A stretch of DNA of 64,000 nucleotides from Blastocladiella emersonii ATCC 22665 (lineage: Eukaryota; Fungi; Blastocladiomycota). Position numbers and translations under genes: made by a program. Position 1 is the first letter of the stretch. Each line of letters starts with the position of its first letter. The notes beneath the pieces were generated by a model, which saw only the letters and a program-made list of their open reading frames with translations, had not been told where the DNA came from and did no database searches. The DNA is taken from NCBI GenBank assembly GCA_025594325.1, contig JANHCV010000001.1, positions 2,356,001 through 2,420,000 on the forward strand, read 5' to 3'. Positions 531 through 44,997 of the stretch are shown here, piece by piece.

Positions 531-2091
531 ATGGCGCCGGACTCTCGAAGCGAGCTGCGGGTCCCCTTGCTCATCGCATGGAACGTGCTCGCGCTCGGGT
601 CGCTGCTGGCCTTCACCTACCTCGCCTACGGCCTGCGCGAAGATGTGATCGTGCGGCGCATGCCGCACCTCATGATCGTGTGCAGCGTCGCGCTCATCTT
701 CCTCGTCAACTGCGGGATCCAGACCCTGTTCGCACACCCCGACGCGCCCGCGCTCAACGACAACCTGACCCGGTTTATCGCCATCGCGTTTGGCATCCCG
801 CTCTGGATTGTACGTCGCGGACCCGCCGCCGCCGCCGCGCGTCGTCGCCGGTCGCATACTCATATCCACTCGTCGTGTAGTGCGCCTACCTCCTGCGCGC
901 CTTTGTGCTCCTCGCCGACCACTTTCTGAACGTGCAGCTGCTCCACGAGTCGTCGACCAACGAGTCGTTTGACTGGCGGATCCACCTCAACTGGAGCGAG
1001 CGGCTGTGCGTGCGCATGCACTGGTGGAGCTTCCCCTTCTTCTTCCGCGAGGAGGACATTGTCTCGGGCCGGTGGTACCGCGGCATGGCGATCCCCGTGT
1101 GCATCTTCGCGACACTCGTCTTCTCGGGCCTCGTCCTCGCGCCGCTCGGCCTGCTGTGGGGCGAGTGCTTCACGCCGGCCAAGGGCGGGTTCCCCGCGTG
1201 CATGTGGGACGGCAAGTACTCGAACCTGTACACGATGCCGTTGCTGCTGGTCATGGTCGGGTGGACGCTGTTCATGGCCTTCATCCTCGTCGTCCTCACC
1301 CGCGTCAAGGACCAGCTGTACCTCCGCATGGAGCTGACCGCGCAGTTCCTCCTCGTCATCACCATGTTCGCCGTCGGGTTCGGCATCCAGCTCGCGCCGA
1401 TCAAAGACCCGTCCGTCGACCCGGGCACCGCCACGGTCCTCGCTGTCATCGCGTGCGTCTTCCTCATCGCCATCACGTTCCCCGTCGCGGCGTGGGGCAT
1501 CCAGCGGATACGAACGCTCGTGACGGGCGGCGCGCAGCCCATGCAGCACACGACCGAGTCGTTCCAGCGATTGCTCGCGGTGCGTCTACATCCGACCTTG
1601 CCGCGTGCGTGGCGACGGGCTGACACTCTCGCCCGCGTGTAGGACAAGGAGCTGTTCGCGCAGTTCAAGAAAGTGCTCGCCGAGCACTTCAGTCTCGAGA
1701 ACGGCCTGTTCTGGTACGTCGCCACGGTCGCCCGGGTACTCGTGTGTGCTCCAACTGACGATGCGCGCGCTAATGTAGGGACGACTTTCGGGAAGTCGAA
1801 GTGCTGGTGTCGACGAAAAAGGGCGACGACGGGATCAAGGCCGCGCTCAACAAGCTGTACCTGCTGTACGTGCCGCCGGGGGCGCCGCGCGAGCTCAACC
1901 TGATGAGCAGCACGCGCGAGTCGGTGATCCGCGACTTCAATGGCGGGCGGCTGTCGCTGCGGTCGTTCGAGCCCGTCAAGAAGGAGGTGTTCGACATGAT
2001 GTACTCGCACTCGCTCCCGCAGTTCCTGCAGCAGTACCGCGCAAGGAACGGGAGTCTCGCTGCGGCGCCGACCACGGCGCACCTCGTCTAA
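531..2091 (+). CDS. 7TM membrane protein with C-terminal RGS domain (GprK/RGS1-like architecture); 4 exons: 531-809, 881-1579, 1643-1713, 1779-2091
   Basis: Seven hydrophobic segments across exons 1-2, then RGS motifs FKKVLAEHFSLENGLFW, YVPPGAPRELNL, FEPVKKEVFDMMYSHSLPQFL. All three introns are GT..AG and keep frame. Confidence 0.88.
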
Positions 2092-3201: not shown

Positions 3202-3684
3202 GGTCGTCCGCGACAAGGCTCTGGTCTGCCAGGTTGTCTTCTGATTTGCCTGAATGGAACGATTCTGTTGACCTGGCCCCTCATCAATCCTTGCTGCTGT
3301 CCGACGCGTGTTTGCAGTCCCCCCACGGGACCACGGTCGTGGCCATGGCCGCGGTGACCCCGCTGCTCGAGACGCTGGCGCCGTCGAGATCACTACTGCA
3401 GTGCACTCCGCGCGCTTCAACGTCGCGCGACTTTGAACTGGACCATGTCGAACTTTAAACTGTACCATAAACCACCTCATTCTGCTAAAAATTAAAGCTG
3501 GACAGCGCGGCAACGGTCCACGTGCCGTGTGTGAGTTGAGTCGCACGCAGCCGAGCGACCGTCGTGCGCCGGGTCGGCGGGTGGCTGGGCGGCGCGGTGC
3601 TGAGCAAGGCCTCGCCGCCGCGAAGGGGTTCCCTTGCGAACGCGCAGTTTTTTCAACGTAACACTTGACGCATTCCCCAGCACG

Positions 3685-4243
3685 ATGCCCAAGAACAAGG
3701 GAAAGGGTGGCAAGACTCGCCGGAGGGGAAAGAACGAGGGCGACGGCGTCAAGCGTGAGCTCGTCTTCAAGGAGGACGGCCAGGGTACGGCTCGCTTCGC
3801 ACAACGTCGCTCGTGCCTCGACCTACGACTGATCCCGTCTCCGCCCTGCCGCACCCGTCTAGAGTACGCCCAGGTCCTCAAGATGCTCGGCAACGGCCGC
3901 CTCGAGGCGCAGTGCTTTGACGGCATCAAGCGCCTCGGCACGATCCGCGGCAAGATGCGCAAGAAGGTGTGGATCAACGTCGGCGACATTGTCCTGATCG
4001 GCCTGCGCGAGTTCCAGGACGAGAAGTGCGACGTGATCCTCAAGTACTCGGCCGACGAGGCCCGCAACCTCAAGGCGTACGGCGAGCTCCCCGACACGGC
4101 CAAGATCAACGAGACGGACGGGCCCGAGGAGGGCGACGATATCGACTTCGAGTTCGACGTCGACGAGGTACGGTGTTCGCGGCGTGGCTCGGTTGCGGGG
4201 ACCCGGACTAACTTGCACTCCTCCTCGTCACTTCTAGATCTAA
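3685..4243 (+). CDS. TIF11: Translation initiation factor eIF1A; exons 3685-3784, 3863-4167, 4238-4243
   Basis: [10 protein letters not shown]..., [41 protein letters not shown], acidic tail ending DVDEI*. Confidence 0.97.
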
Positions 4244-4465
4244 ATCGACCTCTTCTCTCGCTCCAGCGCGCGCACCGCGTCGCGGCCGAGTCGGCAACGA
4301 CTTGTCCGTCGCGCGGGTGCCCCGGTTGTTGTCACCGTTTTGTAATAGGGATACATGTTCCAACACAGACGGACCCCCCTCTCGCCTCTCTGGTGCCTCG
4401 CCGTACGCTCGGGGTCAAAAATGATCAGCTATGTATTGAGATGTATGGTGCGCCCCTCGACCCGA

Positions 4466-6865
4466 CTAGTGCGCGTGCGGGTGCGCATGGGAATGCGAGT
4501 GACTGTGGCCATGGTCGTGGCCGTGCGAGCAGCTGCCGTGGTCGTGGTGGTGGTGATGATGATGACCATGGCCATGGCCATGGCCGTGACCATGATCGTG
4601 CGCGTGGTGGTGATGGTGGTGATCGTGCCCTGCCGCTGCTCCGACAGGCACGAACCCGGCCGCCGCCGCGACGGCCGCGGGCGCCGCGTACGCCAGCTGC
4701 TGCTGGGGCGCGTACGCTCCCACGGCGCCGGTCGGGTACACAAACTCGATGGTGACCTTGTTGATCCCGCGGGCAGCGAGCGCGCCGCGCGCCGCGTCGA
4801 GGTACATCTGCTCGTCGACGTTGGGCGGTGGTGGTGCGGCGAGGGAGATGCGGAAGGCGGCGTGGATATCGCTTCCGCCGTCGTTGCTCCAGATGCGGTG
4901 GTCGATGTGGGTGGCGTTGCCCGCGAGGGCGCGGCGCAGGTCGTCGTGGATGCCGGGCAGCGCGTTGGCGAACCGGCGTGGGACCGTGTTCATGAGGACC
5001 GACAACGAGTAGGAGAGGAGCGGGATGGTCGATGCGAAGATGAGGATGGCGATGAGCAGCGACGCGAGCGGGTCGAACCCGGTCCACCCGAACTGGTAGA
5101 TGAGCAGCGTCGAGATGATCACGCCCACGGACCCGAGCGCGTCGGCGAGGATGTGCAGGAACACGCCCTGCATGTTGGCGTTGTCGTGGTGGTGGTCGCA
5201 CCCGCCGCCATCGCCGCCGCCATGGCCGTGGTGGTGGTGGTCGTGGAACGAGAAGAGACCGACCATGTTGACGGCGAACCCGACCGTGGCCACGATCAGC
5301 AGCCGCTCCGTGTTCATCTCGGGCGGGTGGATGACGCGCTCGATGCCCTCGATCAGAATGTACAGCGAGATGAACACGAGGAAGATGCCGTTGCCGAACC
5401 CGGACAGCGTCTCGACGCGGTTGTACCCGAAGGTGAAGGTGGAGCTGGCGCCCCACTTGGCCATGAGGGCGGCAAACAGGCCGACGGCGAGCGCGATGCA
5501 GTCAAAGAACATGTGGATCGCGTCCGAGATGAGCCCGAGCGAGTTGGTCCACACCCCGTAGGCCAGCTGCACGAACATGTAGCTGAGGTTGATGCACAGG
5601 AAGATGAAGATGGACCGCGAGTCCTTGCTCTCCCAGATGGGCTTCACGTAGTTGCGCCAGTACACGCCGAGCCCGTGGCGCTGCGCGCCGCCGCCGCCGC
5701 CGGGCCCCATGGCGAGCGCGCCGCCGAGCAGCGACGAGGTGCCCGCGAGCCCAGCCCCGCCGCCCGCGGGCGCCCACGCGGCGGCGAGGACGTGCGGGGC
5801 GCTCTTGGTCAGCGAGTCGATGGCCGAGTAGAAAAGCACGGCGCCGGCGATCTCGAACAGGGTCGGGAAGCGGTGGAAGGCGGCGAGCCCCGCGGCGCAC
5901 GCGACGGCGGTGCGCCACCCGTGGGTCGCGATGCGCTGCAGCGGGGCGCCCTGGACCATGGCCGAGTGGTTGCCGAGCGCGTCGAGCGCGACGAGGGTGG
6001 TGCCGAGGAGCACCATCCACAGGGTCAGGTGGGCGAGCGTGTGCGACTCGAGCGCGGTGCTCGAGTGGCCGAACAGCGCGTAGGGGACGACCGACATGGC
6101 GCACGCGAGCGGCGTCGAGGCGGCGAACAGCGACAGGTTGTCGTGCGAGGCGGCGTCGTTGCCCGCGACGAGCGTCTGCTTGACGCGCGCCTGCAGGATC
6201 GCGGTGACGATGGCGCACCCAATGAAGGTCCACGCGGCCGCGGTGAAGGAGACCTCGGCGGAGGTGAAGCCGAAGTCGTTGGCGAACTCGAGCGCGACGG
6301 CGCCCAGCAGCGCGAGCGTGCCGAGGTGCTTGGCGCGCGTCTGGTCGCTGCGGCCCTTGGTCTCGGCGAGCACGGTCGGCAGCCAGAGGCCGACGTACTC
6401 GGTGAACATGAGCACGCTACACGATGTGTGAGATGGGATCGAGGGCGTGTACGGCGAGTGGGGGAAGCACGCACCGCAGGACCGAGGCATGCTTGGTGGC
6501 CTCGAGCGTGAACCACAGGCGCAGCCAGGAGAAGAAGGCGAAGGTGAGCAGCTTGGGCCACTGCTGGCGCGAGACGCGGGTCCACGGGAAGCGGGCGACG
6601 GCGGCGGCGATGAGCGAGGCGACGGTCAGGGCCCAGAAGACGAGCCCCGCGACCGAGAACGAGTACTCGCGGATCAGGTCCTGCGCCGTGACGAGGCCCA
6701 GCACCTTGGCGGCCTTGGCGACGTGCAGCCACACCAGGGACGGATTCCTTGGCAGCTTGCGCGATGACCTGCGGGGCGATGGCCGTAGCGGCAGGGGCGG
6801 TCAGGGCGCTGCGGGTCGCTCGGCGGGGCGTTGATTGCATGACATGGTAGGGACCTGTGATTCAT
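4466..6865 (-). CDS. CDF zinc transporter, ZnT5/Msc2/Cis4-like, with extra N-terminal TM domain and His-rich tail; introns 6417-6474 and probably 6769-6854
   Basis: CDF motifs [46 protein letters not shown]; His-rich loop; C-terminal His-rich tail. The start exon (MNHR, donor GTCCCT) is less certain. Confidence 0.88.
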
Positions 6866-38489: not shown

Positions 38490-40571
38490 TCATGGCGGCG
38501 GCGCGTCCCGTTGCGCCTGCAGCTCCTCGAGCGAGCGCAACCTCGCCTCCCACTCGTCGGCGAGCTGTGCGTCGGGCTCACCGCCGTCCCATCCGCTGCG
38601 CAGGTGCTCGACGAGCTTGCGCGTCGCCTCGACGTGGCCCATCCACGCGGCGCGGTAATAGTACGACACGGCCGCGCTCAGCGAGGCGGGGATCGACAGC
38701 GCGCTGGCCGCCGTCGCGGGCATGCTGGTCGCCCACCCGCGCGAGCCTGCAGCGGGCGCCGGGTCGCCCTGAACCGCGGGCCACGGCGCTGGTTCCTCGT
38801 CCTGCGCATCGCCAGCGTCTCCGTCTGCCGAGTCCGGGAGCCGCGGCGGGAACGGCGGCGGCGCAAGGACCGCGGGCACGACGGGTCCCTCGAGCCCCGT
38901 CTCGTACACGGTTCCGATATGGAACAGCGCGTCAGCGCTGGCCGGGACCTGCGCAGCGGCCGCGTGCCACGCGTGCCACGCGTCGGCGTACCGGCCCATG
39001 GTCCACCACACGTACCCGAGGTTCGCAAGCGCATGGACGTCCCCGCGCGCGGCGGCCGCGCGGTACCACGTCATGGCGAGCACCCAGTCCCTCGGCACGC
39101 CGCGGCCCATCTCGTAGCACGCGCCGAGCGAGTTCATCGCCCTCGCCGACCCAGCCCGCGCCGCCGTCGCCCACATCGCCGCCGCGGCCTCCCAGTCGCC
39201 ACGCACGCGCGCGCGGTTCGCCATGGCGGTGCGCGCCGTCGCGCACCCGCGCCGCGCCGCCTCGGCGTACCACTCGTCGGCGCGCTTCGTGTTCCCGCTG
39301 CGGTCCGCGAGCGCCGCGAGCGCCGTCATGGCCGGGACGTGCCCGGCGCGAGACGCCGCGAGGAACAGGTCCGCGGCGCGCCGCGTGTCCCGCGCGACAA
39401 CGCGGCCGCGCGCGTACATGAGCGCGAGCGCCGTCATGGCCTCTGCGCTCGGGGTCGCGGGTTTCGGCGCGGTCTCGCCGGCAGCGCGTCGGTAGCACGC
39501 GAGGGCCGCGGGCAGGTCGATGGCGGTGCCGAGCCCGCGCTCGTGCAGCGTGCCGAGCAGGTGCCACGAGGGTGCGTGTGGCGGGTTGACTTGCGCAGCG
39601 TCGGAGAGCAGCTGGAACGCGGTCGCGTTGCAGTGCGGGACGCCGAGGCCGTGCAGGTACCGCTCGGCGAGCGCGTACAGCCGCCCCGCGTCGTTGAGCG
39701 CGTGCTCGTTCCGTGCGCTCGAGGCGTCGGGCGAGGAGGCGCGTGAGTCGTCCTTGCGCTTGCCGCCGCGGAGATGCATCGCGGCCAGTTTGGCGGACAG
39801 GAGCTGGTCGAGGTCGACGGCGGGCGTCTGCGCGGGACTCTTCTCGCGCGCCTCGGCCATGGCGATCGAGAGCACTGACAGCTACACAAAGAGAGTGGCG
39901 TTAGAGAGACTCGATGGAGAGGCATTGGGTGTGAGAAGACAACGTACGACATCTCGAAGCGTCGCTCGCGCCGAGTGAGCAAGAGTAGCCAACTTGTTGC
40001 GTCGGGACCCGGGGAACAGCTTGGCCGTGATGGGCTGGTTAGCGCCCGTGATGCGGCGGAGACTGAACTCGAGCCGGAGCAGCGCGAGGTGGTGCTCGTA
40101 GAGGGCGCACTCGAGGGGACCACCGCCCGCGTCTTTGCCACACCGAAACAGCTGCGAGGGACCGTAGCCGGCGGTCTCGCTGACCGTCTTGAGTGCGGCG
40201 CCGAGCGGGTCGACGATGCTGTCCAGCGTCGACTACGAGATGGGCGATTAGCTTAAGGCCGAGACGGAGCAAAGCACCGATCGTACTCTCAGGTAGACGA
40301 GCGACGCGCGAATCGGCTCCCACGGCGCATCCTTGGGAAGCCGCTCCGTCTCGGCCCCGATGGCCGACATGATGGTGATAGTTTCGCCGAGCTCGAGGAC
40401 CCCGCCGGCGAGTCGGACCCTCTGTGTGAAAGCAGAGTCGCGCGTCGGGCTGTACAGTGGCGACGGGACCGCCGTCTGCGCGGTCATGGGCGTTTTGAGT
40501 TCATTTTGCTGCTGGGCAATTGGCGCCGAGATTTGGATTGCAGGAGGTCGCTGATGCGTTGGGACAGGCAT
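38490..40571 (-). CDS. Sel1-like repeat protein; introns 39882-39947, 40233-40286; start codon uncertain
   Basis: LAERYLHGLGV, LLGTLHERGLGTAIDLPAALACY, AMNSLGACYEMGRGVPRDWVLAMTWYRAAA, LFHIGTVYETG. Confidence 0.85.
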
Positions 40572-41588: not shown

Positions 41589-44500
41589 ATGTCCGAGCCC
41601 GACACAACACCACCACCCGAGGCCTCGCCCGAAAGGGTCGACGGTTCTCCCTCGCCCCCTCCTCCACCTCGAGCAGCCTCCGCCTCGTCCGTGACCCGCC
41701 CGCGCTCCGAGGTGGAGCTGACGCCGTCGGACCCGCACGCTGTCGCCATTTCCTCCTCTACCACCGCGTCCGATGCACCAACACCACAACCGACCGCGCC
41801 GCCACCACCCGGCCCTCCCGAGGCCGTCGTGACCATCATCTCCTCGGACGGCCCTGACGGCGCAGCAGTCGGCCGAGGCGGCAGTGGCGGTGGAATACCT
41901 GCGCTGCACACGAACGGGGTCCCGGTCGGCGGCGGCGAGTCGGCTGCTGCGCCACCAGAACCGCCCTCGCCAACGACGACGAACGCCGGCGACCCCGACG
42001 CGCCGTCCGAGGCGGCCAGCACGAGCCCGCTCATCACGGCCGGCAGCGTCGCGCTGTCGCTCCCGCTCACCTCGGTCAACGCCGGCGGAGGGTCGGCCAT
42101 CACCGTCGACGGCCTGTACGAGCAGGCCCTGGCCGGCGCCGGCGCCTCGTTCGCGTCGGGCGACGGCGCGGGACCTAACGGCGGCGCGACCGCGCTCGAT
42201 ACCGACATTCCGCCAACGCCGACGTCGGACGCCGGGTCCAAACCGCGTCGACCGGGCGGCAGTACCGCAGCAGGTGCCGGACCCGGTGGGGCGGGCGGGG
42301 GCGGGGGCGGCGCGGGCGGCGGTGGGGGCGGCGACAAGGACGACCCGATCATGATGAACAACCACCACCGGCGACCGGCGGTCGCGGACATGAAGGCGGG
42401 TCTGCCGAACCTGCTCGAGGTGGACGACGAGAAGGAGAGCGCGCTGGCGCGGCTGCAGCGGCGGGTCGAGGAGCGGCGCGCGCACCTCGAGAAGATCCCG
42501 GTCAGCCAGCGGTATCTCGGCGAGACGTCGTGGTGGCACTTTTCGACGTCCATCATCTTCGCGGGGCTCGCCATGCTCAACTTCGGCATCAACATCCGCA
42601 TCATCCTGTCGGACGTGCCGACGGTGCTCGCGCTGCCGCCGTCGGACCGGCGATACGAGCTCCTGACGCCCAACATCCGCGCGCTGCTCGAGATCTTCAA
42701 CGCCATCCTCCTGTACGGGCTCGTCAAGGACGCGGGCCGCGGGCTCATCTTCATTATCCTCGTCGCCACGAGCAACATGAACTGGGCCATGCTCAAGTGG
42801 GGCTACGCCTTTATCGCGCACTCGCCCTTCTTGCTACCCCTCTTCCTCTCGACGACGCACCGCGCCAAGATGATCCCCGCGCTCTCGCTCATCAACCACC
42901 CGAAGAGTACGTCGTCTCGGTCTCTTCCTTGTTCGCGCCGAGCTAACCACCGCGTGTAGTCGTGTTCTGGGACATTTTCTTCGGCGATGTGCCGTCGGCG
43001 ATCCTGTCGTTTCTCGTCAACTACGGGCAGTGGAACGCGATTGTGCCGATTCTCACCATCGCAGCCATTTTCTTCACGACGCTGTCGCGCCTCACGCGGT
43101 TCCTGTGGATTGCCCTGCTCATGATGAACGAGTACGGCCAGAAGCGCGCGCGGTCGCTCCGCCTGCTCAAGCACCTGTACCTCTGGGGTCGCGGGCTCGA
43201 GTACTACATTGTGTTTCTCGGTACGTTCACGCGTCTTGACTCGTGGTTTGTGGCCGTGCTGACCTTCGACTCGTGCGTGTAGGCGATGATGCGGACAAGC
43301 AAAAGCTCATGTGCGCCGATCCGGGAACCGTGGTGGCGCAGCAACCCCCTCGCTGACGCGTCGCCGCCGCCACACGTGTGTGTAGCCAACACGTCAAGTC
43401 GCGGGTGCAAGAGTTCCAGGAGATGAAGGCCAAGCACATCCAGGACGCGTGGGCGCGCGGGTTCAAGTCGATCATCATCCTCAACACGCTGCAGACCGTG
43501 GTCAGCCTGCTCAGCGGCATCTACCGGTTCCAGCTCGACAAGGCGCCCGACGTGTCCAAGGATCTGGCCGAGGTGCGCGGTTCACCGTAATGCTGCTTGC
43601 AAGGGAAAACTGACCACCAAGCCGTGTAGTTTGAGCGGATCGTGCGCGAGTACGAGCCCGAGCTGATCGCGCTGCGCAACAAGGAGCTGTGGAAGCTGAG
43701 CATCAAGGACCGGCACATTGACGTGATCAACCAGCTTTGGAAGTGCGAGCTAGTCAAGGCGTCGCTGAAAAAGTTCCAGACCACGCACGCCGACAAGTGG
43801 CAGGAGCGCCGCTTCTCGCGTCTGCTCGGCGTCAAGGACATTCTCGACGACCCGCACCAGATCACCTCGCTGCTGAGTTCGTCGCTCGCCGTCGACGAGT
43901 AGTACGTTGCGCGCTGCCTTCCACGGGATCTTCTCGGAGCTCACGGCAAACAACGACCCCGTGTGTAGCTGCCTGTCGAACGCAAGCCGGATCTTGCAAA
44001 ACGACTACGAGCCGACGCCCGAGGACCTGTCGCACATGCCCATCAGTCTGACGGAGCTGCTCTTCACCGAGCTGTGCAAGTCGGTCTCGTACCACGTCAA
44101 GGACAAGGTGCTGGCCAACAACATTTGCATCCTCGACGTGCCCAAGGGTTTCTCGCGGACCAAGCTGCAGGCGCTGGTACGCTCACTCTCATCGCTCCTC
44201 CAGTCCATGGCCACGGACTCACACCTCGCTCATCCGCGCAACCACAGATTCCCTTCTGCCAGACGCTGATCCTGTTCCTCGACATGAACAAGTTCGACGA
44301 GATGGTGATGCTGGCCAAGCCCAAGAGCAAGCACCCGCACGGCGGCCACCACGCGGGCGGCGGCGGCCATGGCCTCGCGAGCCTGTCGCCCGTCAGCATC
44401 GTGCAGCACGGCGGGCCCGATGTCGTCGAGCTGTCGGCCATGGACCTGCCCATGGGCGGCACGCAGTCGGGCGCGAACCTCGGGACCACGTCGAGCGAGC

Positions 44501-44997
44501 TGCCGAACCCGAACGGGACGGCGGCCGGCGGTGGCGCGGGCGCCGGTGGGGCCACGGCCACGAACGGGCGCGACGGGTCAGCAGCAGGCGGCGGAGCGGC
44601 CCCCGGCGGCGGCGGGTCGGGCGGTGTGCTCAAGCCAAGGTTGCAGGTGGAGCTCGAGTTCTTTGAGCGGATCTGCAACGCCAAGGACAAGAACAACATG
44701 GTGACGGGGATCCTGGTGTTCTGGAAGAACTACAGCGTGTTCAAGTCGCGCGTCAACACGCCGGGCACGCTCGACAACTTCACCAAGCTGTACCCGGACT
44801 ACAACGAGCGAAGTCACGGCACGCTCAACGGGCCCAACGTGATCCGCTACTTCAAGCGCCGCATCCTGCGCGCCGCCAACCCGGGCGACCGCTACGTGTC
44901 CATCATCCCCGACTGGGAGCTCAACCGCCGCTTCGACCTGTTCGCCACGCTCAACGAGGTCATCTTCGACCACTATGTCGTGCACCGTGTGACCTAA
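41589..44997 (+). CDS. Multi-pass membrane protein fused to a degenerate heterotrimeric G-protein alpha domain (1007 aa); exons 41589-42906, 42960-43220, 43283-43310, 43386-43572, 43630-43901, 43969-44176, 44248-44997
   Basis: Exon lengths sum to 3024 nt (1007 aa plus stop) with all introns GT..AG. The C-terminal half is collinear with G-alpha: YIVFLGDDADKQKLIQHVK, GFKSIIILNTLQTVVSLL, INQLWKC, EYCLSNASRILQNDYEPTPEDL, ICILDVPKG, LILFLDMNKFDE, FFERICN, ILVFWKNYSVFKSRV, FTKLYPDY. Confidence 0.85.

What the first reader, a model, noticed from the sequence alone, without database searches (positions are those of the whole stretch)
41589..44997. Multi-pass membrane domain fused in frame to a whole G-alpha domain
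Seen: 7 exons with canonical splice sites give one 1007-aa ORF: about 300 aa of disordered P/S/G-rich sequence, about 5-6 hydrophobic segments (STSIIFAGLAMLNFGINIRIIL ... ILTIAAIFFTTLSRLTRFLWIALLMM), then about 500 aa collinear with G-alpha from beta1 to the C-terminal helix. The last TM segment and the G-alpha beta1 strand (YIVFL) share exon 2, so the fusion is not produced by joining two genes with an intron. Established: canonical G-alpha is soluble, anchored by N-terminal lipidation, and encoded separately from its receptor. Inference: a receptor/channel-G-alpha fusion with the N-terminal helix and lipid anchor replaced by TM helices. I know of no characterised natural protein like this, but cannot search. 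The six-frame ORFs break it into fragments that would be easy to miss.
Basis: partly seen in the sequence, partly recalled or inferred. Interest (0 to 1): 0.92.

Follow-up and report, generated by a model that had tools for sequence, protein, structure and literature searches.

The report
Membrane-embedded dead G-alpha fusion protein
A water mould-like fungus (Blastocladiella emersonii) and its whole phylum carry one conserved gene that welds a six-helix membrane domain of unknown kind directly onto a complete G-protein alpha-subunit fold that has lost every GTP-binding motif, an uncharacterised architecture for this famous signalling protein.

Summary
Seven GT-AG exons (41589-44997, +) give a 1007-aa protein. 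It equals GenBank's "hypothetical protein" H9P43_000890 of Blastocladiella emersonii, apart from a 3-nt donor choice.

The fusion is real:
- The same architecture occurs in seven Blastocladiomycota proteins from six species and in one metagenome contig.
- The last membrane helix and beta1 share an exon in every gene mapped.
- A Sel1-repeat neighbour is shared.
- Purifying selection is strong (omega 0.03-0.06 in both modules).

- The alphaN helix is not replaced. It continues the last membrane helix.
- All five G boxes are destroyed in every member, so this is a pseudo-GTPase, not a receptor-driven GTP switch.

The membrane module has six hydrophobic segments and matches no GPCR or other known family by sequence or fold.

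My best reading is a permanently membrane-embedded, nucleotide-independent G-alpha-like adaptor. The partners and the signal are unknown.

I found no paper on it. The scan noted this stretch twice, and a similar "membrane protein fused to dead G-alpha" on another piece of this genome, which I could not read. No RNA data were available.

The parts
41589..42398 (+). Exon 1, N-terminal disordered P/S/G/A-rich region (aa 1-270). It has no cysteine and no signal peptide.
   Evidence: Translation. The in-frame GC3 of 0.80 is higher than in the shifted frames. Orthologues also carry 150-270 aa disordered N-termini. Omega is 0.13.
42399..42527 (+). Conserved acidic/basic helix ahead of the first membrane segment (LPNLLE..EEKES..L..RRVEERR, then SWWH).
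   Evidence: Conserved in all members, including the unannotated upstream part of the Catenaria gene. It is helical in the AlphaFold model.
42528..42906 (+). Membrane module, part 1. Hydrophobic segments H1 (aa 318-340), H2 (363-379), the invariant K-[DE]-A-x-[RK] turn, H3 (386-402), H4 (404-423) and the conserved basic loop HRxK..NHPK (424-439).
   Evidence: Hydropathy and charge counts. Alignment A4. Segment conservation.
42960..43126 (+). Exon 2, membrane module part 2. H5 (WDIFFxDxP, with two invariant Asp) and H6 (the last membrane helix, with an R/K-x-x-R-F motif).
   Evidence: Helices H143-164 and H172-221 of model m0d3ed865eaac.
43127..43220 (+). Same exon 2: alphaN-equivalent helix (K/R-rich, unbroken continuation of H6), then the beta1 strand (YYIVFL).
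   Evidence: One 51-residue helix in the model (H198-248), followed by strand E252-257. VIA-align pairs Gi residues 3-353 with model residues 207-737.
43283..43310 (+). Exon 3, a 28-nt micro-exon that encodes the degenerate P-loop (G-DDADKQK in place of GxxxxGK[ST]).
   Evidence: The micro-exon is conserved in both Allomyces copies and in Sorochytrium, and is merged with exon 2 in three other genomes.
43386..43901 (+). Exons 4 and 5 (43386-43572, 43630-43901): end of alpha1 and the all-helical domain.
   Evidence: Pfam PF00503 stretch 544-719 matches profile positions 39-174. The PDB profile match to helix alphaA of Gi. All-helical in the model.
43969..44176 (+). Exon 6: linker 2 and switch I remnant (YEPTxxD..MPISLTE), beta2-beta3, and the G3 remnant (DVPKG).
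   Evidence: HMMER alignment to Gi residues 150-198. A weak PF00503 hit on this exon alone. Motif table.
44248..44340 (+). Exon 7 start: switch II/alpha2 remnant and beta4 (IPFCQTLILFLDMNKFDE).
   Evidence: Alignment A3. Strands E494-500 and E507-510 in the model.
44341..44625 (+). Disordered G/A/S-rich insert of about 95 aa at the position of switch III (between beta4 and alpha3). Its length varies across members, up to several hundred aa in Sorochytrium.
   Evidence: pLDDT below 50 for model residues 514-613. Alignment A3. Omega is 0.14.
44626..44997 (+). C-terminal half of the Ras-like domain: alpha3, beta5 with WKNY in place of NKxD, alphaG, alpha4, beta6 with IIPDW in place of TCAT, alpha5 (..NEVIFDHYVVH), and the stop codon at 44995-44997.
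   Evidence: PF00503 profile positions 231-302. HMMER alignment to Gi residues 236-291. This is the best conserved part of the protein. It was the query that found the family.

Best explanation
This is one real gene, B. emersonii H9P43_000890, present across the phylum Blastocladiomycota. It encodes an integral membrane protein with four parts: a disordered cytosolic N-terminus, an orphan membrane module of six hydrophobic segments, one long helix, and a complete G-alpha fold. The topology is probably N-in/C-in. The long helix is both the last membrane span and the G-alpha alphaN helix. The G-alpha fold (Ras-like domain plus helical domain) has lost all five guanine-nucleotide motifs and has a long disordered insert in place of switch III.

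It therefore most likely does not cycle GTP. It probably acts as a permanently membrane-embedded, nucleotide-independent G-alpha-like adaptor. In this reading the conserved cytosolic face of the membrane module (H4, basic loop, H5) sits against the alpha4/beta6/alpha5 face, which in normal G-alpha faces the receptor. The rigid H6-alphaN helix couples the two modules. Output would be by protein binding, possibly modulated by whatever the membrane module senses.

Shown: the gene model by homology, the fusion, the fold, the loss of motifs, and selection. Inferred: topology, lack of nucleotide binding, the intramolecular docking, and an adaptor role.
For: Fusion is real:
- The same architecture occurs in seven proteins from six Blastocladiomycota species and in one metagenome contig.
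- Two apparent exceptions are annotation errors.
- The last membrane helix and beta1 share an exon in all seven genes mapped.
- A divergent Sel1 neighbour is shared.
- DNA contigs span the junction without differences.
- Omega between the two Allomyces copies is 0.060 for the membrane module, and 0.054 and 0.027 for the G-alpha parts, against 0.13-0.14 for the disordered parts.

G-alpha fold:
- Pfam PF00503 scores 34.9 bits for this protein and 50.2 bits (above threshold) for the Paraphysoderma orthologue.
- The family profile finds only G-alpha among its best 60 PDB matches, E 3e-5, in three collinear stretches.
- Foldseek against PDB gives E 1.5e-8.
- The top 30 Swiss-Prot model matches are all G-alpha.
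- Language-model neighbours are G-alpha.

Dead motifs:
- HMMER alignments put Pro at the catalytic Arg178, Leu at Thr181, and K-N-x-S at N-K-x-D.
- G1, G3 and G5 read GDDxDKQ, DVPKG and IIPDW, and they vary further in basal members.

Topology: K+R counts fit six spans with both ends inside.

Conservation: it peaks in beta6/G5, alpha4, alpha5, H4, H5 and the inner loop, and is lowest in the outer loops.
Against: - No transcript evidence could be obtained.
- Nucleotide binding was not measured.
- The G1, G3 and G5 registers rest on ungapped alignment from conserved anchors and on a model built from only 8 sequences (pLDDT 69, pTM 0.53).
- AlphaFold draws H2-turn-H3 as one helix, which would give five spans and opposite-side termini.
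- The last 8 residues of alpha5 have pLDDT below 50, so the proposed docking of alpha5 on the membrane module is not seen in the model.
- Switch II residues that bind G-beta in Gi (such as Trp211) are not kept, so a G-beta-gamma partner is doubtful.
- No partner, ligand or phenotype is known.
Confidence: 0.55

Rival explanations
1. The membrane module is itself the working part, for example a small transporter, channel or lipid scramblase-like protein. The dead G-alpha fold is then its cytosolic regulatory or gating domain. FeoB's G domain on an iron transporter and the cytosolic enzyme on the voltage-sensor protein Ci-VSP are comparable cases (my own knowledge).
For: Invariant charged residues lie in or next to the hydrophobic segments: K-[DE] between H2 and H3, two Asp in H5 (WDIFFxDxP), and R/K-x-x-R in H6. 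H4 and H5 are as conserved as the G-alpha core. Weak, convergent leads point to small XK-related-like membrane proteins. The language-model search gave 45 and 44 of 100 neighbours. One AlphaFold DB cluster named XK-related matched at probability 0.95, TM 0.36.
Confidence: 0.22
2. It is a decoy or scaffold for canonical G-protein partners, like plant XLG2. The membrane-fixed pseudo-G-alpha would bind G-beta-gamma and/or a membrane RGS independently of nucleotide and so tune the ordinary G-protein pathway.
For: XLG2 lacks the nucleotide-binding residues yet binds G-beta-gamma and AtRGS1 (bioRxiv 10.1101/795088). The alphaN helix, one of the two G-beta contact sites, is retained. Thr182 of switch I appears kept (ISLTE). 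An RGS domain preceded by a hydrophobic, membrane-like stretch lies 40 kb upstream in this window.
Against: Switch II is rewritten and differs between members (DVPKGFSRTKLQ against DIPDSADPKALK). Glu sits at the Gly183 position, where substitution makes Gi RGS-insensitive (my own knowledge). Switch III is replaced by a disordered insert. There is no sequence relationship to XLGs beyond the shared G-alpha fold, and XLGs are absent from the top structural matches.
Confidence: 0.15
3. It is a true self-contained receptor-G-alpha switch. The membrane module would act as receptor and exchange factor, and the fused G-alpha would bind and hydrolyse GTP with unorthodox motifs.
For: The order (membrane domain, then alphaN, then G-alpha) is the one used in engineered GPCR-G-alpha fusions that do signal (PMC9721090, listed). 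The whole fold, including the helical domain and alpha5, is kept under strong selection.
Against: The P-loop Lys/Ser, switch I Arg/Thr, the DxxGQ Gly/Gln, the NKxD Asn/Asp and TCAT are all lost. The replacements are not even conserved between members (GDDADKQ, GDEPDQI, GDPEERG, GEEADRK). The module has six hydrophobic segments and no GPCR similarity.
Confidence: 0.06
4. It is an artefact: two neighbouring genes joined by gene prediction or by mis-assembly.
For: No RNA evidence was available.
Against: The junction lies inside one exon, with no intron, in seven genes from six species. Contigs from separate runs cross it. The joining helix is continuous and conserved.
Confidence: 0.02

Closest known systems
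Canonical heterotrimeric G-protein alpha subunits (Pfam PF00503; Gi/o/t and fungal group I are the best structural matches)
   Same: Full fold in the same order: alphaN, beta1, alpha1, inserted all-helical domain, linker 2, beta2-beta6, alpha5 at the C-terminus. Conserved landmarks are kept, such as xPTxxD in linker 2, the alpha3 pattern and YP[DE]Y.
   Different: No N-terminal lipidation. AlphaN is welded to a membrane helix. All five G boxes are lost. Switch III is replaced by a disordered insert of variable length. The Pfam score is below the gathering threshold for this protein.
Plant extra-large G proteins (XLG1-3; XLG2 as a 'decoy G-alpha', bioRxiv 10.1101/795088)
   Same: A G-alpha-like domain lacking the residues needed for nucleotide binding, placed C-terminal to a long unrelated N-terminal region. 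It is thought to work without nucleotide.
   Different: The XLG N-terminus is soluble (nuclear localisation signal and Cys-rich region; my own knowledge), not a membrane domain. XLGs are plant-specific and were not retrieved by any search here. This points to independent origins.
Engineered GPCR-G-alpha fusion proteins (for example beta2-adrenoceptor-G-alpha-s, PMC9721090)
   Same: Same topology: the C-terminal end of a membrane domain is joined to the N-terminus of G-alpha in one polypeptide.
   Different: Those are artificial, use a 7TM receptor and an active G-alpha, and are joined by a flexible tail rather than a continuous helix.
Natural fusions of signalling modules to membrane domains: 7TM-RGS (plant AtRGS1; a TM-RGS also lies in this window), oomycete GPCR-bigrams (PMC6033456), and B. 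emersonii rhodopsin-guanylyl cyclase BeGC1 (PMC4046227). PMC9730499 describes the general trend in this genome.
   Same: A cytosolic signalling domain is tied covalently to a multi-pass membrane domain. The B. emersonii genome paper notes this as a recurrent theme.
   Different: None of the described cases has G-alpha as the fused domain. In those cases the membrane part is a recognisable 7TM or rhodopsin.
Membrane-anchored GTPases outside the G-alpha family: SR-beta (an Arf-like GTPase with an N-terminal anchor) and FeoB (a G domain on a transporter). From my own knowledge, not tested here.
   Same: A P-loop GTPase fold on the same chain as membrane helices.
   Different: Those are active GTPases of other families. 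FeoB has the opposite domain order.

Membership tests
Heterotrimeric G-alpha (PF00503) | Ras-like domain with an all-helical domain inserted between alpha1 and beta2, plus alphaN and a C-terminal alpha5 | tested here: met
Heterotrimeric G-alpha (PF00503) | Pfam PF00503 score at or above the gathering threshold (48.8 bits) | tested here: not met
   The window's protein scores 34.9 bits, E 1.2e-8. Orthologues score 29.9, 28.3, 31.7 and none. Only Paraphysoderma passes, at 50.2 bits.
Heterotrimeric G-alpha (PF00503) | G1 P-loop GxxxxGK[ST] | tested here: not met
   After beta1 the members read GDDADKQK, GDEPDQIR, GDPEERGD and GEEADRKK. The register is ungapped from the conserved Gly, and the model shows a shortened loop.
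Heterotrimeric G-alpha (PF00503) | G2/switch I catalytic Arg and Mg-binding Thr (RxxTxG) | tested here: not met
   The HMMER alignment to Gi puts Pro at Arg178 and Leu at Thr181 (..MPISLTE..).
Heterotrimeric G-alpha (PF00503) | G3 DxxGQ with catalytic Gln | tested here: not met
   The motif reads DVPKG, DLPRD or DIPDS, and SVPTE in the metagenome member.
Heterotrimeric G-alpha (PF00503) | G4 NKxD and G5 TCAT guanine-recognition motifs | tested here: not met
   The HMMER alignment puts W-K-N-Y-S over L-N-K-K-D. G5 is IIPDW in all members.
Heterotrimeric G-alpha (PF00503) | N-terminal myristoylation/palmitoylation as the membrane anchor | tested here: not met
   The protein starts MSEPD, and the G-alpha fold begins near residue 496, after six hydrophobic segments.
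Heterotrimeric G-alpha (PF00503) | Binds guanine nucleotide and G-beta-gamma | not testable with these tools
   This needs biochemistry. Sequence argues against nucleotide binding.
Plant extra-large G proteins (XLG) | G-alpha-like C-terminal domain lacking key nucleotide-binding residues | tested here: met
   Same property here. The XLG2 property is taken from bioRxiv 10.1101/795088.
Plant extra-large G proteins (XLG) | Soluble N-terminal extension with a Cys-rich region, and plant orthology | tested here: not met
   The N-terminal 300 aa contain no Cys and are followed by membrane segments. Every homologue with a named source organism is from Blastocladiomycota, plus one unassigned metagenome contig.
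G-protein-coupled receptors (7TM) | Seven membrane helices and a sequence or fold match to a GPCR family | tested here: not met
XK-related proteins (PF09815) | Sequence match to PF09815, or fold match to XK-related proteins | tested here: inconclusive
   No Pfam or PDB sequence match. Language-model neighbours score 0.79-0.82. One AlphaFold DB cluster matches at probability 0.95 but TM only 0.36.

The most novel reading that the evidence does not exclude
The protein is a single-chain, nucleotide-free 'receptor-G-alpha complex'. The orphan six-helix module would sense a signal (ligand, lipid or voltage). It would pass a conformational change down the continuous H6-alphaN helix, and through a docked alpha5, to a G-alpha fold that switches partners without GTP. 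That would be a new, nucleotide-independent mode of G-protein-like transmembrane signalling, invented in zoosporic fungi. Consistent hints: the best structural matches are receptor-bound, nucleotide-free Gi/Gs with an open helical domain (rmsd about 9 A, against about 17 A for closed forms). Conservation also peaks on the receptor-facing elements and on the inner face of the membrane module.
Probability: 0.2. Interest if true: 0.85.

Novelty: new variant of a known kind. Interest (0 to 1): 0.64.

Why it matters
G-alpha is one of the most studied signalling proteins. It is textbook knowledge that G-alpha is a soluble, lipid-anchored GTP switch encoded apart from its receptor.

Here a whole fungal phylum keeps, under strong purifying selection, a G-alpha fold that is built into the membrane through its own alphaN helix and cannot plausibly bind GTP. 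Together with plant XLGs, this would be a second, independent case of a G-alpha fold reused without nucleotide. It would also be the first natural case I could find of G-alpha fused to a multi-pass membrane domain.

It offers three things:
- a natural experiment on what the G-alpha scaffold can do without its nucleotide;
- a rigid, natural geometry for a membrane-domain/G-alpha junction;
- an orphan membrane module whose function is open.

Blastocladiomycota zoospores are models for chemotaxis and phototaxis, and B. emersonii has already yielded an optogenetic tool from a comparable fusion (BeGC1).

The limits are a narrow lineage, no functional data, and the fact that the proteins already sit in public databases as 'hypothetical protein'.

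Tried and rejected
- RNA evidence: none was listed for the gene. A second search returned only DNA runs from one sample. Laying those contigs confirmed the DNA only.
- Pfam on single exons gave only two weak collinear G-alpha hits.
- Homologues of the membrane module alone: none among proteins of 241-768 aa or of about 126-400 aa. No PDB sequence match and no Pfam match for any of 7 members.
- Internal 3+3 repeat in the membrane module: hhalign probability below 1%.
- Sub-profiles of the G-alpha part and a single-sequence PDB search were too weak to fix the G1, G3 and G5 registers objectively.
- The metagenome scan with the family profile found nothing new.
- A family tree was uninformative because of long branches.
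- Hits P0006 and P0007 of the library search are repeat or low-complexity proteins, not relatives.
- No canonical G-alpha sequences could be obtained, so I made no phylogeny against G-alpha subfamilies.
Full report
**Observation**

The + strand of 41589-44997 holds six short introns with GT..AG ends (53-75 nt). Donors are GTACGT, GTGCGC or GTACGC, and five of the six acceptors end in GTGTAG. Removing them gives a single 1007-aa frame. An in-frame stop lies 11 codons before the ATG.

The public databases already hold this gene. Protein P0009, [quoted passage not shown], has 1006 aa and is encoded at exactly this span of contig JANHCV010000001.1. The acceptor at 44247, rather than 44262, is likewise supported by the conserved IPFCQT.

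**The family**

I searched 1.84 billion representative proteins with the last 123 residues. That gave five relatives and two hits that proved unrelated. A profile search added three more.

| Protein | Species | Length (aa) |
|---|---|---|
| P0009 | B. emersonii | 1006 |
| P0002 | B. britannica | 928 |
| P0001 | Catenaria anguillulae | 616 |
| P0010 | Allomyces macrogynus | 1001 |
| P0011 | Allomyces macrogynus | 995 |
| P0003 | Sorochytrium milnesiophthora | 1021 |
| P0004 | Paraphysoderma sedebokerense | 832 |
| P0005 | JGI metagenome (fragment) | 154 |

The named sources all call the protein 'hypothetical' or 'uncharacterized'. The family spans both classes of the phylum listed in the taxonomy. 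Nothing outside it was found.

**Is the fusion real?**

Yes, on five grounds.

1. Every full-length member has the same order: disordered N-terminus, conserved helix, membrane module, G-alpha-like domain.
2. The two apparent exceptions are annotation errors.
   - The Catenaria model starts at an internal Met. The disordered region, the LPNLLEEE..KES helix and the first two hydrophobic segments are encoded in frame directly upstream (L005).
   - The Sorochytrium model lacks 33 aa only because a 234-nt 'intron' hides an exon reading ..HREKAIFALSISNHPY (L004 2778-3011).
3. Exact mapping of seven proteins onto their loci shows that the last membrane helix and beta1 always share one exon. The 28-nt P-loop micro-exon is conserved in B. 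emersonii, both Allomyces copies and Sorochytrium.
4. A divergently transcribed Sel1-repeat gene sits upstream in the window, B. britannica, Sorochytrium and one Allomyces copy.
5. The metagenome contig L007 (GC 38%) encodes a further member, with part of the membrane module and the whole G-alpha-like domain across introns.

Contigs from separate DNA runs cross the junction with no differences, although they may come from the sample that gave the assembly.

Nei-Gojobori omega between the two Allomyces copies:

| Region | Omega |
|---|---|
| Membrane module | 0.060 |
| N-terminal half of the G-alpha part | 0.054 |
| C-terminal half of the G-alpha part | 0.027 |
| Disordered N-terminus | 0.13 |
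| Disordered insert | 0.14 |

Both modules are therefore functional and constrained.

**The G-alpha fold**

- Sequence evidence is moderate but consistent.
  - Pfam PF00503 scores 34.9 bits (E 1.2e-8) for this protein, below the 48.8-bit cut-off. The Paraphysoderma orthologue scores 50.2 bits.
  - A family profile against all PDB sequences lists only G-alpha among its best 60, at E about 3e-5. It matches three collinear stretches: helix alphaA, linker 2/switch I, and alpha3-beta5-alphaG.
- A protein-language-model search of exon 7 gives G-alpha clusters first.
- Structural evidence is strong.
  - The AlphaFold2 model of residues 270-1006 has pLDDT 69 and pTM 0.53. The disordered insert accounts for most of the low-confidence residues.
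  - Foldseek against PDB finds only G-alpha in its top 50, E 1.5e-8.
  - Foldseek against Swiss-Prot models finds only G-alpha in its top 30, covering hit residues about 9-347.

That range includes alphaN. In the model one 51-residue helix (H198-248, protein residues 467-517) runs from the last membrane span straight into the alphaN position, followed by beta1. So alphaN is kept and fused, not replaced. The variable G/A/S-rich insert lies between beta4 and alpha3, where switch III should be.

**A dead nucleotide site**

- HMMER's own alignment to Gi puts Pro at Arg178 and Leu at Thr181.
- It also puts K, N and S at the N, K and D of NKxD.
- Counting without gaps from the conserved Gly after beta1, GAGESGKS becomes GDDADKQK. 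The other members read GDEPDQIR, GDPEERGD and GEEADRKK.
- DVGGQ becomes DVPKG, DLPRD, DIPDS or SVPTE.
- TCAT becomes IIPDW.

The replacements at G1 and G3 differ between members, which argues against an alternative nucleotide site. By contrast, W-[KR]-N and IIPDW are invariant family signatures. I infer a pseudo-GTPase since the common ancestor of the phylum. This has not been measured.

**The membrane module**

- There are six hydrophobic segments at residues 318-340, 363-379, 386-402, 404-423, 440-461 and 467-495.
- K+R counts in all members fit six spans with both ends inside. The pre-H1 region, the K-[DE]-A-x-[RK] turn, the HRxK..NHPK loop and the alphaN-like helix carry 2-8 positive charges each. 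The putative outer loops carry 0-2.
- AlphaFold instead draws H2-turn-H3 as one helix, so the parity is not settled.
- No relative was found by word-seeded profile search, Pfam or PDB sequences.
- No convincing fold match was found in PDB, AlphaFold DB clusters or the ESM Atlas.
- GPCRs appear only in the noise.
- The one recurring lead is small 'XK-related'-annotated membrane proteins. It comes from the language-model search and from one AlphaFold DB cluster at TM 0.36. It is unsupported by sequence, and I treat it as unproven.

**How it probably works**

Conservation across the deepest splits is highest in beta6/G5 (0.74), alpha4 and alpha5 (0.61), H4 and H5 (0.60-0.61) and the inner basic loop (0.54). 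It is lowest in the outer loops (0.10-0.26) and the insert (0.20).

In ordinary G-alpha, alphaN, alpha4-beta6 and alpha5 face the receptor. Here alphaN is physically part of the membrane module. The simplest reading is a fixed intramolecular unit in which the cytosolic face of the module packs on that face of the dead G-alpha fold. The protein would then act by binding partners at the membrane rather than by a GTP cycle.

The best VIA matches are receptor-bound, nucleotide-free G-alpha with an open helical domain (rmsd about 9 A against about 17 A for closed states). That fits, but the domain orientation in an 8-sequence model is weak evidence. The last residues of alpha5 are modelled with low confidence.

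Rival readings are given separately with their odds: a regulatory domain of a transporter-like module, an XLG-like decoy for G-beta-gamma or RGS, a true GTP switch, and an artefact.

**Comparison and novelty**

- The nearest concept is plant XLG2, a G-alpha-like protein with negligible nucleotide binding that still binds partners. XLGs have a soluble N-terminus and are unrelated beyond the shared fold.
- Engineered GPCR-G-alpha fusions have the same domain order.
- B. emersonii is known for tying signalling domains to membrane domains (BeGC1; PMC9730499). That paper does not mention G-alpha.
- The surveys I checked do not describe such an architecture either: PMC3971589, PMC12716839 and PMC6033456.
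- None of the four locus tags I searched appears in the searchable literature.

I class this as a new variant of a known kind: a G-alpha-derived pseudo-GTPase with an unprecedented membrane-integrated architecture.

The scan's other readers noted the dead G boxes and the non-GPCR look of the module on this same stretch; I tested both and agree. They also noted a similar 'membrane protein fused to dead G-alpha' on another piece of this genome, which I could not reach.

**Limits**

- No transcript data.
- No biochemistry.
- Models rest on shallow alignments.
- No access to model coordinates.

Noticed in passing
window 43899-43902: There are tandem splice donors 3 nt apart at intron 5. GenBank's model uses GTAGTA at 43899 (AVDDCLS). 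The donor GTACGT at 43902 gives AVDEYCLS, which matches all orthologues. This is either an annotation slip or alternative splicing.
   Followed up: partly
window 44247 / 44262: Two in-frame acceptors exist for intron 6, giving 1007 or 1002 aa. The conserved IPFCQT in orthologues favours 44247.
   Followed up: partly
L004 2778-3011 (Sorochytrium milnesiophthora): The annotated 234-nt intron is 3-4 times longer than the gene's other introns. It hides an exon encoding the H4/inner-loop segment (..HREKAIFALSISNHPY), so the public protein KAL7747520.1 lacks about 33 aa.
   Followed up: yes
L005 about 3560-4000 (Catenaria anguillulae): The public protein ORZ32246.1 starts at an internal Met. The disordered region, the pre-membrane helix and the first two hydrophobic segments are encoded in frame just upstream.
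   Followed up: yes
window 38493-39875 (-): A Sel1-repeat gene (PF08238, 67 bits) is transcribed divergently from the fusion gene. The same neighbour occurs in B. britannica, Sorochytrium and one Allomyces copy, so the synteny is conserved across the phylum.
   Followed up: partly
window 1774-2088 (+), with 881-1639 (+): An RGS domain (PF00615, 29.9 bits, above threshold) is preceded by a frame rich in hydrophobic segments. That would make a membrane-tethered RGS 40 kb upstream of the membrane-tethered pseudo-G-alpha. I did not test whether the two interact.
   Followed up: partly
L007 (JGI metagenome 3300047125, contig end): An AT-rich (GC 38%) contig encodes a further family member that is cut at the contig end. 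A 407-aa disordered ORF on the opposite strand (3288-4511) ends in the family's PNLLxEEEEKE pre-membrane motif. It may be an inverted partial duplicate or a mis-join.
   Followed up: partly
same genome, another piece (scan note s1-076277): Another reader noted a 'membrane protein fused to a catalytically dead heterotrimeric G-alpha domain' elsewhere in this genome. My protein searches found only one B. emersonii member, so it would be a divergent paralogue or an unannotated gene.
   Followed up: no
window 43921: One contig of DNA run X3 lacks one base here, inside intron 5. The other runs agree with the window.
   Followed up: no
P0006 (3694 aa): A giant repeat protein scored E 1.7e-9, through 16 short stretches, against the 123-aa query. 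Its Pfam hits are a scatter of unrelated families typical of low-complexity repeats. It is not a relative.
   Followed up: partly
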